A stretch of 64,000 nucleotides of DNA from Haplodiscus bocki (taxonomy: Eukaryota): NCBI GenBank assembly GCA_965655095.1, contig OZ296659.1:64790001-64854000 (forward strand), in the 5' to 3' direction. This document shows, in pieces, positions 7,266 to 24,605 of this stretch (position 1 is the first letter of the stretch; every line of letters begins with the position of its first letter). The notes beneath the pieces are model-generated. The model was not told the origin of the DNA. It did no database searches and saw only the letters and a program-made list of their open reading frames with translations. A program made the translations under genes and the position numbers.

Positions 7266-9125
7266 TGTCGCGTTAGACCTAACGCTAAACAACCATAACG
7301 GTAAACGTTAAACTAAAGCTTTAACGCTAAACAGTCCACACTACTACAGAGTGCTAGTCTTGAATTTACGTTACCAATAACGCTAGACGGGCATAACGTT
7401 AAAGAGTGCTAGTTCTAAATTTAGCAAGGACGTAAAAGAAATAATAATAGCAACTTACCGTTTGAAGGGATAGTTGTTGGAGAGCGGTAACAAAGTTGAA
7501 ATTGCACATTTTGAAGCTTCAAAATTTCGTTGCCATGCTTCAAACTGATAAAACGAAGCTTTTCTATTTGTAACCCCCCCGTTCTCGGATTTTGATTTTA
7601 TTGCTTCACGAAAGGCACACCTTCTTCATATTTTGACGGTTTTTGATGGATCACGATATTTGGTGCTCCTTGGCGGAAGGCTTACCGTACTTGGTCATAG
7701 CCTTGAAAAGTACGAAAACGCGGCCTTTTTGAACGCTGGCCACCAACACGAAAGCTCATAACTGACTTGATCGCCTACCGTCAACCACCACCTCCAAAAC
7801 AGCGGAATAACTGAAATTCCTAATTTTCTCTTCAAGAACTTTCAAAATTTCAAGAAAATTAAAACCTTCGAACAAAATTCCAAGTTTCTTTAAATTAGCC
7901 AAAAGTTCTTCGACGGTGGAATATTCCAACTATCCAAAGAAAAAAAGAAACTACTATTCAAAGATCAAGCGACTCAACAAAAAGAACTGCACGCGGTATA
8001 TCAAAATATACTAAAAGTATCGAACAAAATGTTAGTATCTAAAATAACTCACCCTGGTAGAGTACATCTCACCAGGAAACTTAGTATTTAAGATCGGGCC
8101 TGTTAGCATATACTCTAAAGAGGAGCTAACGGATGACCACGATCCTAAAAGGACGTGTGAGACTCAATTGAGTTCCCGAACCATAAGAGAAATTGCTCGG
8201 TGGTCCTTCCGATTGGGGTTGTGCCTTTTTTGGGCTGCCTCCATTGAAGTGAAATGATGCCGAGTCTTAGATAAAATCACTAACACTAACCCAGTCTTCG
8301 ATCAGATTCAGATGTCAGAGGCACATTGGTTCTTATTCAATGGTTTAAATTCCTAACCTAGGAGAAATCGCTCGGTTGCTACGCGTAAGCTGAGTTACCG
8401 TGTCTTAGCTACTAACCTAACACCTCTGATCGAAACTGAATTAAAGTAAAATTGACTTAGAGGATTACTTGCAAAATGAACTGTTAGAAAAGACGGATAA
8501 TTGTATTTTCCGTCCTGACGTAAACTTTTAGCAGGTTGATGGTGCTCGACGACAATTCATCTCCTATAAGGTTAGAAAAAGTATCATAACCAATGCTACT
8601 GTGATTTTACTGATTTTATATCTAATGTTCCATCGAATTAAATCGTGTGCAACAAAATTCTTTTGAAATTTGTCCTAAAAATTTAGATTTATAATTTCGT
8701 CATAAATTGTCTGGGTGTTGATAAATTTTGAACAAATAATTCTTGATAATACAGTTGCTGACTGCCTTACTTTGAATGAAAATTGAATAGAGTGAAATTT
8801 GAACTAACTTTTCTACGCTGGAACAGTACCGTCACCTTTGCCCACTCCCTACCAAGTTTACCATTATTGTATTTGGAGCCATAGATTTCTTTCAATATTA
8901 TAATTGTCAACTCTGAATAAATTCTTTGCAAATTCTTAAGCCACTTTATAGCAATCCACTAAATCCTTGCCAGCGAATTCACGCTCCACTTTTGTTCACG
9001 CGGGCCGGCAAGGCAATTTTGAGACTTAAGTTGTTTAAATAGCAACGGCTGCACACCAGGAAGTTCACAAGTGTTTGTCAATATAAGTTGGAACCAAAAT
9101 AATCCACTACAACCCCCGCGCGACA
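7266..9125 (+). repeat. 5' LTR
   Basis: TGTCGCG...CGCGACA 7-bp inverted termini. Colinear with 22746-24605 at offset 15480. AATAAA near 8916. Confidence 0.97.
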
Positions 9126-9128
9126 AAC

Positions 9129-9146
9129 TGGTGCGACCAGTGAGGC
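9129..9146 (+). promoter_or_regulatory. Primer-binding site (probably elongator tRNA-Met or tRNA-Ile(UAU) type)
   Basis: TGGTGCGACCAGTGAGGC lies 3 nt after the LTR. Its reverse complement GCCTCAC-TGGTCGC-A-CCA has tRNA 3' architecture with the GCCTCAC T-stem seen in animal Met(e)/Ile(UAU) tRNAs. Confidence 0.75.
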
Positions 9147-9376
9147 ACAAAAAAAATTTTTTGTGTGATGATGCTTTGAGTGAAGTATACGAGGTTTTTA
9201 ACTCTATTGTGCTACTTTCCCCAGGTCTGTTAATTTCAACTTTAGTCTACTTCTTAACTGTGAATTTTATGGTCACTATTGGATCTTTATTCTTGGTGCT
9301 AGTAAGATTGAATATCTTAAATCGACACCGGATTTCTCCAAGTGATCACGTACGACTTTAACTTAAGTCACTGTGG

Positions 9377-9508
9377 ACGAGACGTGACGTAATTGTGGCT
9401 CTATATTTCTTCTTTTTCACGATAGTGGCACTCCTATTGACCCCACCTTATCTTCTCGCTGTGATACGATTGGAACGAATCATAATTGGACAGAACTGTG
9501 ATTCTTAA
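9377..9508 (+). pseudogene. Accessory 43-codon transmembrane peptide, copy 1 (ACG at the start position)
   Basis: TRRDVIVALYFFFFTIVALLLTPPYLLAVIRLERIIIGQNCDS*. Same length and pattern as 9722-9853. Confidence 0.55.
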
Positions 9509-21912: not shown

Positions 21913-21966
21913 AAATTTTTTTCAATATAACACGTTACTAATTCTTAGTGTTTAGATTCTTAATCA

Positions 21967-22296
21967 ATGGAGAGCGACGACTCTTTGCCCATCTTAACTG
22001 ATCTGGATTTCATATTCCCAACTTTAACGCCATCAGCATTGGAACAACCAGCCGAGCCAGTTGTAACTCTTCTCTCACCTCCTTCGATAAGTATTCCATC
22101 AAATCCTGCTTCACCCGACGAGCAATCAGACACAGCTCCAACGACGCGGGGACTATCTTCGGTTACGGGGTGTTCAGTTGCTACCTTCACTACTGACCAG
22201 CCACAAATTTCTACTATTGCATCTTCTGTTGGAGACGCTAAGTCCAAGAACTTATCCTCTCACCGTGCACGCGCACGCGCTCGACCTAAACAATGA
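21967..22296 (+). CDS. Ser/Pro/Thr-rich accessory ORF with basic C-terminus
   Basis: Intact 109-aa ATG ORF ending RARARARPKQ. Overlaps the next ORF by ATGA. Confidence 0.55.
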   Translation: MESDDSLPILTDLDFIFPTLTPSALEQPAEPVVTLLSPPSISIPSNPASPDEQSDTAPTTRGLSSVTGCSVATFTTDQPQISTIASSVGDAKSKNLSSHRARARARPKQ

Positions 22297-22778
22297 GTTC
22301 GAAATTTGCAACGACACACCAGCAAAGACTTCCCAAAAAGAGACAGACTAACACTTGCTCGCCAACACAAACGGGAGTATTTCACACAACTAGCGAGGGC
22401 CGTGAAGAAACCTCGTTTCAACCCCATTTGTGTTATAGTTTGAAACCAGAATATTCCTCCTGGAAGTTAATCTTTTGGGACAGCCAGCAACAGGAATTCA
22501 CCATACAGAACACATTTCTTCCCACTCAGCAGCTTGTTGTTCCGCTGCGCGCTATTACAGCTAATCCTCAGCATTGATTTAAATTTAAACTTTTCGAAGA
22601 AACTAATGGCTACCTTCATAATGACATTATGTACCTTGAAATTTCTTTCTTTGACCCGCCGATACCACCTACCCAGTCTTCTCTACTTTTTTTCTTTTCC
22701 GTAGAGACCCCCAATCATTTTCAACACCTTGTCAGTCGGGTGAGTTGTCGCGTTAGACCTAACGCTAAACAATCATAA
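22293..22778 (+). pseudogene. Accessory ORF reading through the PPT into the 3' LTR (one internal TGA)
   Basis: After TGA 22575 the frame continues FKFKLFEETNGYLHNDIMYLEISF...VSCRVRPNAKQS* to 22778. Confidence 0.55.
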
Positions 22779-24605
22779 CGGTAAACGTTAAACTAAAACT
22801 TTAACGCTAAACAGTCCATACTACTAAAGAGTGCTAGTCCCAAATTTACGTTACCAATAACGCTAGACGGGCATAACGTTAAAGAGTGCTAGTTCTAAAT
22901 TTAGCAAGGACGTAAAAGAAATAATAATAGCAACTTACCGTTTGAAGGGATAGTTGTTGGAGAGCGGTAACAAAGTTGAAATTGCACATTTTGAAGCTTC
23001 AAAATTTCGTTGCCATGCTTCAAACTGATAAAACGAAGCTTTTCTATTTGTAACCCCCCCGTTCTCGGATTTTGATTTTATTGCTTCACGAAAGGCACAC
23101 CTTCTTCATTTTTTGACGGTTTTTGATGCATCACGATATTTGGTGCTCCTTGGCGGAAGGCTTACCGTACTTGGTCATAGCCTTGAAAAGTACGAAAACG
23201 CGGCCATTTTGAACGCCGGCCACCAACACGAAAGCTCATGACTGACTTGATCGCCTACCGTCAACCACCACCTCCAAAACAGCGGAATAACTGAAATTCC
23301 TAATTTTCTCTTCGAGAACTTTCAAAATTTCAAGAAAATTAAAACCTTCGAACAAAATTCCAAGTTTCTTTAAATTAGCCAAAAGTTCTTCGACGGTGGA
23401 ATATTCCAACTATCCAAAGAAAAAAAGAAACTACTATTCAAAGATCAAGCGACTCAACAAAAAGAACTGCACGCGGTATATCAAAATATACTAAAAGTAT
23501 CGAAGAAAATGTTAGTATCTAAAATAACTCACCCTGGTAGAGTACATCTCACCAGGAAACTTAGTATTTAAGATCGGGCCTGTTAGCATATACTCTAAAG
23601 AGGAGCTAACGGATGACCACGATCCTAAAAGGACGTGTGAGACTCAATTGAGTTCCCGAACCATAAGAGAAATTGCTCGGTGGTCCTTCCGATTGGGGTT
23701 GTGCCTTTTTTGGGCTGCCTCCATTGAAGTGAAATGATGCCGAGTCTTAGATAAAATCACTAACACTAACCCAGTCTTCGATCAGATTCAGATGTCAGAG
23801 GCACATTGGTTCTTATTCAATGGTTTAAATTCCTAACCTAGGAGAAATCGCTCGGTTGCTACGCGTAAGCTGAGTTACCGTGTCTTAGCTACTAACCTAA
23901 CACCTCTGATCGAAACTGAATTAAAGTAAAATTGACTTAGGGGATTACTTGCAAAATGAACTGTTAGAAAAGACGGATAATTGTATTTTCCGTCCTGACG
24001 TAAACTTTTAGCAGGTTGATGGTGCTCGACGACAATTCATCTCCTATAAGGTTAGAAAAAGTATCATAACCAATGCTACTGTGATTTTACTGATTTTATA
24101 TCTAATGTTCCATCGAATTAAATCGTGTGCAACAAAATTCTTTTGAAATTTGTCGTAAAAATTTAGATTTATAATTTCGTCATAAATTGTCTGGGTGTTG
24201 ATAAATTTTGAACAAATAATTCTTGATAATACAGTTGCTGACTGCCTTACTTTGAATGAAAATTGAATAGAGTGAAATTTGAACTAACTTTTCTACGCTG
24301 GAACAGTACCGTCACCTTTGCCCACTCCCTACCAAGTTTACCATTATTGTATTTGGAGCCATAGATTTCTTTCAATATTATAACTGTCAACTCTGAATAA
24401 ATTCTTTGCAAATTCTTAAGCCACTTTATAGCAATCCACTAAATCCTTGCCAGCGAATTCACGCTCCACTTTTGTTCACGCGGGCCGACAAGGCAATTTT
24501 GAGACTTAAGTTGTTTAAATAGCAACGGCCGCACACCAGGAAGTTGACAAGTATTTGTCAATATATGTTGGAACCTAAATAATCCAGTACAATCCCCGCG
24601 CGACT
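22746..24605 (+). repeat. 3' LTR
   Basis: About 26 substitutions versus the 5' LTR and no indels seen. Terminal CA reads CT. Followed by the ACTT TSD. Confidence 0.97.

What the first reader, a model, noticed from the sequence alone, without database searches (positions are those of the whole stretch)
7266..24605. Giant 'complex retrovirus-like' Gypsy element combining an ADP-ribosyl-hydrolase, a chuvirus-type fusogen and about ten accessory genes
Seen: 17.3 kb between matched LTRs with a TSD, gag-pol, env, and small ORFs before gag, between pol and env, after env and on the antisense strand. Known: ordinary Metaviridae are mostly much shorter with 1-3 ORFs, and errantivirus env derives from baculovirus F. 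Inference: this is an independently evolved, potentially infectious invertebrate retrovirus lineage with its own anti-host-defence toolkit, analogous to lentivirus accessory genes. I cannot confirm novelty without searches.
Basis: partly seen in the sequence, partly recalled or inferred. Interest (0 to 1): 0.93.

Follow-up and report, generated by a model that had tools for sequence, protein, structure and literature searches.

The report
Dead Gypsy retroelement with macrodomain and envelope
This is a decayed 17.3-kb copy of an abundant envelope-carrying Ty3/Gypsy retroelement; its polymerase gene carries an ADP-ribose-removing macrodomain and it has three conserved small extra genes, so its gene set is unusual, but this copy is not infectious.

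Summary
The element is real. Two 1,860-nt LTRs (98.6% identical, no indels) span 7266-24605 with a 4-bp ACTT duplication. Inside lie gag, PR-macrodomain-RT-RNaseH-IN pol and a 715-residue class III (Monjiviricetes/chuvirus-type) glycoprotein gene. The macrodomain matches human OARD1/TARG1 (E 2.6e-25). The residues aligned with its catalytic Lys and Asp are kept in about 91-94% of 119 relatives.

"About ten accessory genes" is an overcount. The ORFs "before gag" and several others are pieces of gag and pol. This copy has 11 in-frame stops and at least 3 frame changes in those two genes, so it is not autonomous.

Three small ORFs between pol and env are conserved in other copies:
- A (73 aa) and B (74 aa) are tandem paralogues.
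- C (112 aa) has no detectable relatives outside this family.

One 96-aa antisense ORF is a weaker candidate. None has a recognisable fold or family.

Gypsy elements with this chuvirus-like glycoprotein are already published (eLife 2026). I found no description of a macrodomain inside Ty3/Gypsy pol or of the A/B/C genes.

Verdict: a new variant of a known kind. The host organism is not identified.

The parts
7262..7265 (.). Target-site duplication, 5' copy (ACTT)
   Evidence: The same 4 bases follow the 3' LTR at 24606-24609.
7266..9125 (+). 5' LTR (1,860 nt; TG...CA ends; one sense AATAAA at 8916-8921)
   Evidence: It aligns to the 3' LTR at 98.6% without gaps. Ends were read.
9129..9146 (+). 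Primer-binding-site-like stretch starting with TGG, 4 nt after the LTR; the tRNA is not identified
   Evidence: Sequence read. There is no tRNA gene in the window for comparison.
9515..11682 (+). gag (broken: 6 in-frame stops and at least 1 frame change); capsid-like Retrotrans_gag region and one CCHC zinc knuckle
   Evidence: Pfam PF03732. The knuckle is seen. Relatives of 279-396 aa span its pieces in one frame.
11665..11671 (+). Run of seven A just upstream of the gag stop, inside the gag/pol overlap: candidate -1 ribosomal frameshift site
   Evidence: Sequence read. The pol frame is -1 relative to the gag tail frame. No significant downstream RNA structure (z = -0.72).
11631..17085 (+). 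pol (broken: 5 in-frame stops and at least 2 frame changes); order PR - macrodomain - RT - RNase H - IN
   Evidence: Pfam hits are. Outer bounds come from relatives' ORFs. RT's best solved relative is Ty3 RT. IN's best is foamy-virus IN, then Ty3.
12501..12887 (+). OARD1/TARG1-type macrodomain inside pol, between protease and RT
   Evidence: PDB 4j5q and related entries, E 2.6e-25 over 129 residues. NCBIfam DarG, 4.6e-12. Pfam Macro is weak. The residues aligned with the catalytic Lys and Asp are present here and in 108/119 and 110/117 relatives.
13563..14507 (+). RT palm/thumb and RNase H domains of pol (Pfam envelopes)
   Evidence: RVT_1, RT_RNaseH_2 and RT_RNaseH.
15468..15973 (+). Integrase zinc-binding (H2C2) and catalytic core (rve) domains of pol
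   Evidence: A relative of 581 aa adds a C-terminal SH3_Tf2-1 / Integrase_p58_C module.
17700..17990 (-). Antisense ORF of 96 aa (candidate gene, weak)
   Evidence: Its cluster at 90% identity or more has 9 members. Eight are 96 aa. One relative of 184 aa reaches window position 18255. No Pfam or PDB match.
18699..18920 (+). ORF A (73 aa), conserved small gene, paralogue of B
   Evidence: 45% identical to B, E 4e-21, no gaps. Cluster of 15. A/B profile finds 66 representatives. A against B: pN 0.37, pS 0.69; identity by codon position 0.58/0.66/0.47. AF2 pLDDT 77, four strands plus a helix.
18938..19162 (+). ORF B (74 aa), tandem paralogue of A
   Evidence: (cluster of 16).
19170..19508 (+). 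ORF C (112 aa), conserved small gene
   Evidence: 123 relatives at 56-94% identity. 62 of 120 representatives are 112-114 aa. Cluster of 27. AF2 pLDDT 72. No fold or family match.
19543..19651 (+). 32-nt tandem repeat (3.4 copies) about 110 nt upstream of the env start; role unknown
19765..21912 (+). env: intact 715-residue class III fusion glycoprotein of the Monjiviricetes/chuvirus type
   Evidence: PF24664, E 1.1e-36. Signal-peptide-like N-terminus, transmembrane segment near residues 600-631, tail of about 85 residues, 17 Cys, no furin motif. Full-length relatives of 695-742 aa. No stop. No sequence match in PDB.
21967..22296 (+). Post-env ORF (109 aa), doubtful
   Evidence: Cluster of only 3. 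No Pfam hit.
22731..22745 (+). Weak polypurine-tract-like stretch abutting the 3' LTR
   Evidence: Sequence read. This is an inference.
22746..24605 (+). 3' LTR (the last base differs from the 5' LTR)
24606..24609 (.). Target-site duplication, 3' copy (ACTT)

Best explanation
Window 7266-24605 is one insertion of a high-copy, env-carrying Ty3/Gypsy (Metaviridae-type) LTR retroelement.

Shown:
- Matched LTRs and a 4-bp target duplication.
- gag, then pol in the -1 frame with the order PR-macrodomain-RT-RNaseH-IN.
- A 2.7-kb spacer holding three conserved small ORFs (A, B, C).
- An intact class III glycoprotein gene.

Inferred life cycle of intact family members:
- Transcription starts in the 5' LTR.
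- Gag-Pol is made by -1 slippage at an A7 run.
- Reverse transcription is primed by a tRNA, and integrase makes 4-bp duplications.
- env is translated from a subgenomic message and acts as a fusogen for cell-to-cell or soma-to-germline transfer, as in Drosophila gypsy.

Inferred role of the macrodomain: it is an OARD1/TARG1/DarG-type ADP-ribosylhydrolase delivered with Pol. It most likely strips ADP-ribose that host PARP-type enzymes place on element proteins or nucleic acids, by analogy with RNA-virus macrodomains.

A, B and C are real protein-coding genes of the family, with unknown function.

This copy is a dead member. gag and pol carry 11 in-frame stops and at least 3 frame changes, while env, A, B and C are still open.
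For: - LTRs and duplication.
- Gypsy-type domains and order. Close relative P0520 has PR-Macro-RT-RH in one 926-aa ORF.
- Macrodomain.
- env.
- Family-wide presence: 363 relatives of the PR-macro-RT stretch, 211 of env and 123 of C at E <= 0.001, plus 66 cluster representatives for A/B.
- Co-occurrence proxy: identical 'longest contig' lengths link the lists. By eye there are 9 pol-env pairs, 11 pol-C pairs and 7 env-C pairs.
- Coding signature of A/B.
- Conserved length of C down to about 68% identity.
- Break counts.
- Candidate slippery run.
Against: - No DNA of other copies was examined. Colinearity of macro-pol, A/B/C and env inside one LTR pair elsewhere rests on shared contig lengths only.
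- No RT/IN phylogeny was made.
- Macrodomain activity and its target are untested.
- No significant RNA structure follows the A7 run.
- The protein search's length window (333-1,060 aa) could not show whether any intact full-length pol exists.
- The host organism is unknown. The source is an ENA metagenome-style assembly.
Confidence: 0.85

Rival explanations
1. It is a composite locus. An ordinary Gypsy element received a copy-specific insertion of a non-retroviral endogenous viral element (a chuvirus glycoprotein plus neighbouring sequence). On this reading env and the spacer ORFs are not part of the retroelement family.
For: The 2.7-kb gap between pol and env is unusual for Gypsy elements. 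Jingchuvirales glycoprotein fossils are often found next to fragmentary Gypsy sequences without proof of capture (PMC10084718).
Against: - env, C, A/B and macro-pol each have tens to hundreds of relatives, with large near-identical clusters.
- Many relatives sit on contigs of identical length across the lists.
- All of it lies inside one LTR pair with a target duplication.
- Gypsy elements with this glycoprotein are published.
Confidence: 0.04
2. All the small ORFs, including A, B and C, are chance or decaying reading frames. They are kept only because the copies are young, so the element has no accessory genes beyond env and the macrodomain.
For: - Control flank DNA also shows an excess of ORFs of 70 aa or more (15 against 8.4).
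- A, B and C have no Pfam, PDB or fold match.
- The post-env ORFs and one spacer ORF sit in clusters of 1-3, and the other antisense ORFs are absent from the collection.
Against: - A and B are full-length paralogues at only 45% identity with no gap. Both are still open, with pN well below pS and the third codon position least conserved.
- C keeps a length of 112-114 aa in 62 of 120 cluster representatives, down to about 68% identity.
- The A/B profile finds 66 representatives at the 50% level, several as tandem pairs.
- In this copy gag and pol carry at least 14 lesions in 7.6 kb, while env plus A, B and C (2.9 kb) carry none. A Poisson estimate gives about 5.4 expected and P about 0.004. This is my calculation, and it assumes the lesions are independent.
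Confidence: 0.08
3. This copy belongs to a non-autonomous sublineage. It spread with gag and pol already broken, using proteins supplied by intact relatives, while its 3' genes stayed under selection.
For: - There are many more lesions than 1.4% LTR divergence predicts.
- Several gag pieces have exactly the same length in copies on different contigs. For example, 8 of 15 listed members of one cluster are 119 aa.
- The 3' genes are intact.
Against: - The collection may hold the same locus several times, as haplotypes or repeated assemblies. A 339,838-nt contig carries identical pieces. Shared lesions may therefore be one locus counted repeatedly.
- LTR gene conversion could also make the insertion look younger than it is.
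Confidence: 0.3
4. The macrodomain is a non-catalytic ADP-ribose reader or a structural spacer in Pol, not an eraser that counters host defence.
For: - No activity data exist.
- The Pfam Macro score is below the gathering threshold.
- For one arthropod-borne virus, ADP-ribose binding rather than hydrolysis was reported as the critical property in mosquitoes (title and abstract of PMC12632316).
Against: - The residues aligned with the TARG1 catalytic Lys and Asp are kept in 108/119 and 110/117 relatives. The numbering K84/D125 is from my own knowledge, mapped through the alignment.
- Similarity is to hydrolase-type macrodomains, OARD1 and DarG.
Confidence: 0.2

Closest known systems
Ty3/gypsy 'errantiviruses' with HSV/gB-type (chuvirus-like) ENV, Chary & Hayashi, eLife 2026 (PMC13524379; preprint 2023)
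   Same: Gypsy-type pol followed by a class III glycoprotein like that of mosquito BEL/Pao elements and Chuviridae. They occur as multi-copy families in invertebrate genomes.
   Different: That survey required gaps between ORFs of at most 500-1,000 nt, regions of at most 10 kb and LTR spacing of at most 14 kb. This element has a 2.7-kb pol-env spacer, about 12.4 kb from the gag start to the env stop, and 15.5-kb LTR spacing. The paper mentions no macrodomain and no conserved small ORFs.
Anakin and other mosquito BEL/Pao elements with a Chuviridae glycoprotein (Dezordi et al. 2020, PMC7642597)
   Same: An LTR retroelement that captured a Jingchuvirales-type glycoprotein as env.
   Different: The pol here is Gypsy-type. 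Its Pfam hits are RT_RNaseH_2, Integrase_H2C2 and SH3_Tf2-1, with no BEL/Pao hit, and its best solved RT relative is Ty3. It also has a macrodomain and extra ORFs.
Drosophila gypsy / genus Errantivirus in the strict sense
   Same: gag - pol - env between LTRs, a 4-bp target duplication and a tRNA primer site.
   Different: The env here is class III (PF24664), not the baculovirus-F type. The element is about twice as long and has a macrodomain and A/B/C.
Human OARD1/TARG1 and bacterial DarG macrodomains
   Same: Clear sequence similarity across the whole domain, with the aligned catalytic Lys and Asp conserved.
   Different: Here the domain is embedded in a retroelement Pol polyprotein between protease and RT. 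Its substrate is unknown.
Macrodomains of RNA viruses and macro-domain ORFs in fish epsilon-like endogenous retroviruses (Basta et al. 2009, as cited in PMC4977317)
   Same: A virus or retroelement carrying a macrodomain. This is the precedent for the counter-defence reading.
   Different: In the fish ERVs they are described as additional ORFs. Here the domain is an in-frame part of a Metaviridae-type pol, and it is of the TARG1 subtype.
Bdelloid rotifer LTR retrotransposons with captured extra ORFs (Rodriguez et al. 2017, PMC5408684)
   Same: LTR retrotransposons that carry additional ORFs beyond gag, pol and env.
   Different: Those ORFs are of different kinds, and neither 'macro' nor 'ADP-ribose' occurs in that paper's text.

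Membership tests
Ty3/Gypsy (Metaviridae-type) LTR retrotransposon | Direct LTRs with TG...CA ends and a 4-6 bp target-site duplication | tested here: met
   The last base of the 3' LTR differs.
Ty3/Gypsy (Metaviridae-type) LTR retrotransposon | pol domain order PR-RT-RH-IN | tested here: met
Ty3/Gypsy (Metaviridae-type) LTR retrotransposon | RT/IN group with Ty3/Gypsy in a phylogeny | tested here: inconclusive
   No tree was made. The best solved RT relative is Ty3 (9.1e-16). The best IN relative is foamy-virus IN (1.5e-21), ahead of Ty3 (3.1e-10). The Pfam modules are Gypsy-typical.
Ty3/Gypsy (Metaviridae-type) LTR retrotransposon | tRNA primer-binding site and polypurine tract next to the LTRs | tested here: inconclusive
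   A TGG-starting stretch lies 4 nt after the 5' LTR, and a weak purine-rich stretch lies before the 3' LTR. No tRNA was available to match.
env-carrying Ty3/gypsy with gB/chuvirus-type ENV (eLife 2026) | Class III glycoprotein gene downstream of a Gypsy pol, within the LTRs | tested here: met
   PF24664, E 1.1e-36, type I membrane topology. No structure was predicted for env.
env-carrying Ty3/gypsy with gB/chuvirus-type ENV (eLife 2026) | Uninterrupted gag, pol and env (an 'intact' element as catalogued there) | tested here: not met
   gag and pol are broken in this copy. env is intact.
Genus Errantivirus in the strict sense (Drosophila gypsy) | Baculovirus-F-type env | tested here: not met
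   The only Pfam family hit by env is PF24664.
BEL/Pao (Anakin-like) | BEL/Pao-type pol | tested here: not met
   No BEL/Pao family appears among the Pfam hits. The modules are Gypsy-typical.
OARD1/TARG1/DarG-type macrodomain hydrolases | Sequence membership in the subfamily | tested here: met
   E 2.6e-25 to OARD1 structures and 4.6e-12 to the DarG model.
OARD1/TARG1/DarG-type macrodomain hydrolases | Catalytic Lys and Asp present | tested here: met
   Both are present in the window copy and in 108/119 and 110/117 relatives. The residue roles are from my own knowledge of TARG1.
OARD1/TARG1/DarG-type macrodomain hydrolases | ADP-ribosylhydrolase activity | not testable with these tools
Jingchuvirales (chuvirus) glycoprotein lineage | Nests among Jingchuvirales glycoproteins in a tree | not tested
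   Only the Pfam family match was made. Fetching animal-virus comparators is barred. All 211 relatives found are unnamed ENA proteins.
'Complex' retrovirus-like gene content | Conserved extra protein-coding genes besides gag, pol and env | tested here: met
   This holds for A, B and C only. Their function and expression are unknown.

The most novel reading that the evidence does not exclude
A widespread, so far uncatalogued lineage of envelope-carrying Ty3/Gypsy elements has three special features. It has built a TARG1/DarG-type ADP-ribosylhydrolase into Pol. It maintains at least three small genes of its own: a duplicated four-strand-plus-helix protein (A and B) and ORF C. It may also have an antisense gene. 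That would point to ADP-ribosylation as a host restriction pathway against retroelements in invertebrates. It would also be an independent origin of 'complex' gene content outside the Retroviridae.
Probability: 0.4. Interest if true: 0.78.

Novelty: new variant of a known kind. Interest (0 to 1): 0.6.

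Why it matters
Macrodomains are known as viral countermeasures to host ADP-ribosylation in RNA viruses. A conserved TARG1/DarG-type macrodomain fused into the Pol of an abundant Metaviridae-type element suggests that the same conflict operates on retroelements in invertebrates. It also offers a natural handle for studying it.

The conserved A, B and C genes, and the long pol-env spacer, show that published size and gap filters for env-carrying Gypsy elements miss a whole architecture.

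The correction matters too. This copy is a fossil, and most of its 'accessory genes' are debris of gag and pol.

Tried and rejected
- Pfam, NCBIfam and PDB sequence searches found nothing for the small ORFs, the antisense ORF, the post-env ORFs or 20 flank ORFs.
- AlphaFold models of A and C were compared by Foldseek with PDB (A and C) and BFVD (A only). No match had E below 0.03. The top hits were EF-P domain I, a Pur-alpha repeat and PC4-like proteins. I treat these as a topology hint only.
- A profile-profile test of A/B against C showed no relation.
- The env sequence had no hit against PDB.
- Rfam and tRNA scans of the window found nothing.
- The RNA fold downstream of the A7 run was not significant.
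- An ORF-count test against Markov shuffles was not discriminating, because control DNA is also enriched.
- Host identification failed. Looking up a flank ORF 12 kb from the element gave only an unnamed ENA assembly contig.
- PBS typing from the eLife supplement failed because no supplement is held.
- Nested-insertion and copy-specific-insertion readings were rejected. There are no internal inverted or long direct repeats in the spacer, and the parts are conserved across the family.

Full report

Yes for the frame of the element.
- Two direct repeats of 1,860 nt lie at 7266-9125 and 22746-24605. They align without gaps at 98.6% identity. Counting the last base there are 26 differences, 15 transitions and 11 transversions.
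- The 5' LTR starts TG and ends CA. The 3' LTR differs in its last base.
- ACTT flanks both ends, giving a 4-bp target-site duplication.
- A TGG-starting, PBS-like stretch begins 4 nt after the 5' LTR.
- Each LTR has a single sense-strand AATAAA about 205 nt before its end.
- The window has no N, and blastn finds no second copy of the element in it.

**2. Genes**

*gag.* It carries a weak Retrotrans_gag match and one CX2CX4HX4C knuckle. Relatives' ORFs of 279-396 aa run in a single frame across several of the window's small ORFs. They place gag at about 9515-11682. The 'small ORFs before gag' are therefore gag itself.

*pol.* It spans about 11631-17085.
- It reads D-T-G protease, macrodomain, RT, RNase H, then integrase with its zinc-binding domain, core and SH3-like C-terminus.
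- One close relative, P0520, has PR-Macro-RT-RH in one uninterrupted 926-aa ORF.
- The best solved RT relative is Ty3 RT (9.1e-16). The integrase core is closer to foamy-virus integrase (1.5e-21) than to Ty3.
- pol lies in the -1 frame relative to the gag tail. A run of seven A sits in the overlap just before the gag stop and is a plausible slippery site. No significant downstream structure follows it.

*env.* It spans 19765-21912 and is open for 715 residues.
- It matches Pfam PF24664, the Monjiviricetes fusion glycoprotein family, at 1.1e-36.
- It has a signal-peptide-like start, one transmembrane segment near residues 600-631 and a tail of about 85 residues.

**3. State of this copy**

- gag has 6 in-frame stops and at least 1 frame change.
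- pol has 5 in-frame stops and at least 2 frame changes.
- env and ORFs A, B and C have none.

This copy cannot be autonomous or infectious. At the lesion density of gag and pol, about 5.4 lesions would be expected in env plus A, B and C. That gives a Poisson P of about 0.004. This is my estimate, and it assumes the lesions are independent.

Several gag pieces have identical lengths in copies on other contigs. This could mean that a defective lineage spread with help from intact relatives. It could equally be one locus represented several times in the collection.

**4. The macrodomain**

- Residues 270-398 of the open stretch that begins at the protease motif (window 12501-12887) match human OARD1/TARG1 structures at E 2.6e-25.
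- They also match the DarG antitoxin model at 4.6e-12.
- The Lys and Asp aligned with the TARG1 catalytic pair are present. The numbering K84/D125 is from my own knowledge, mapped through the alignment.
- Of 119 relatives, 114 cover the whole domain. The Lys is kept in 108 of 119 and the Asp in 110 of 117.

The macrodomain is a family feature, not an accident of this copy.

**5. Extra ORFs**

Between pol and env lie three sense ORFs.

*A and B.*
- A (18699-18920, 73 aa) and B (18938-19162, 74 aa) are tandem paralogues. They are 45% identical over their full length with no gap (E 4e-21).
- Comparing A with B gives pN 0.37 against pS 0.69. Identity by codon position is 0.58, 0.66 and 0.47. This is the pattern of protein-coding constraint.
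- Their clusters at 90% identity or more have 15 and 16 members, mostly of unchanged length.
- A profile of A and B finds 66 representatives among 1.84 billion proteins, several as fused tandem pairs.

*C.*
- C (19170-19508, 112 aa) has 123 relatives at 56-94% identity.
- 62 of the 120 listed representatives are 112-114 aa.

*Structure predictions.*
- AlphaFold models reach pLDDT 77 for A and 72 for C. Both show four strands followed by helices.
- Foldseek finds nothing significant in PDB or BFVD.
- Pfam finds nothing. A/B and C are unrelated by profile comparison.

*Other ORFs.*
- An antisense ORF (17700-17990, 96 aa) sits in a 9-member cluster with 8 members of the same length. One relative reaches 184 aa. 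It is a weak candidate.
- The remaining antisense ORFs are absent from the collection. The two post-env ORFs and one spacer ORF are there only as clusters of 1-3.
- ORF counting alone does not discriminate, because control flank DNA is also enriched.

**6. Family and co-occurrence**

All relatives are unnamed ENA proteins. Some clusters are very large, with 854 and 850 members for a pol piece and an env.

Exact 'longest contig' lengths recur between the hit lists. By eye there are 9 pol-env matches, 11 pol-C matches and 7 env-C matches. A, B, C and the antisense ORF also share several contigs. This is a proxy for co-occurrence. It does not prove colinearity.

The protein search could only see hits of 333-1,060 aa for the pol query. 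Whether intact full-length pol genes exist is therefore unknown.

**7. Literature**

- Capture of a chuvirus glycoprotein by BEL/Pao elements (Anakin) dates from 2020 (PMC7642597).
- A 2023 survey saw Gypsy fragments next to such glycoproteins but claimed no capture (PMC10084718).
- Chary & Hayashi (PMC13524379; preprint 2023) report 114 gypsy elements with this glycoprotein in Coleoptera, Hymenoptera, Polyneoptera and Hexanauplia.
- Their filters would exclude this architecture. They required ORF gaps of at most 500-1,000 nt, regions of at most 10 kb and LTR spacing of at most 14 kb. They do not mention a macrodomain.
- Macro-domain ORFs are noted in fish epsilon-like ERVs.
- Seven searches found no paper describing a macrodomain inside Ty3/Gypsy pol. 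This library does not include Repbase.

**8. Verdict**

- This is a new variant of a known kind: gB/chuvirus-type env-carrying Gypsy elements, here with a TARG1-type macrodomain in Pol and three conserved small genes.
- This copy is a fossil.
- The host is unidentified. The source is a metaMDBG-style ENA contig. CpG observed/expected is about 0.95 and GC is about 38%.

**9. Steps left out, and possible slips**

- The only look-up was for a flank ORF 12 kb from the element, with a 300-nt flank.
Alignments across frame changes were reduced to counts and outer bounds.
- Possible slip 1: scripts printed three-frame translations of the gag region and the spacer, and stops are visible in them.
- Possible slip 3: while reasoning I referred to contexts of some stops.

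Noticed in passing
window 19543-19651: A 32-nt tandem repeat (3.4 copies, 93% matches) lies about 110 nt upstream of the env start codon. It could be a regulatory or leader element of the env message.
   Followed up: partly
window 39180-39966: A 59-nt satellite array of about 13 copies at 92% matches, in the host flank.
   Followed up: no
window 33284-33436 and 29119-29218: Short tandem arrays with periods of 63 and 31 nt. The first lies inside a 150-aa ORF (33074-33526) that has no Pfam hit.
   Followed up: no
window 30420-30660, 42205-42307, 58175-58337, 31801-31886, 57003-57088: Dispersed direct and inverted repeats of 86-163 nt at 71-78% identity. They are probably old interspersed repeats in the flank.
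   Followed up: no
window 25000-42000: The flank DNA has more ATG-ORFs of 70 aa or more than Markov shuffles (15 against 8.4). All 20 flank ORFs tested lack credible Pfam hits. This may be degenerate repeats of unknown kind.
   Followed up: partly
window 34001-36000: A strongly A-rich strand bias (AT skew 0.42).
   Followed up: no
window about 20750 (inside env); L001: In the ENA assembly that holds this locus, the region seems split into a 12,133-nt contig and a 64,469-nt contig, and the second appears to begin inside env. That would explain why the exact env protein is not in the protein collection.
   Followed up: partly
window 15572-16528 region (integrase core): The integrase core is markedly closer to prototype foamy virus integrase (1.5e-21) than to Ty3 integrase (3.1e-10) among solved structures.
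   Followed up: no
window 17700-18020: This stretch is richer in G+C, is open on both strands, and has a 24-nt motif repeated 204 nt apart. The conserved antisense ORF lies here.
   Followed up: partly
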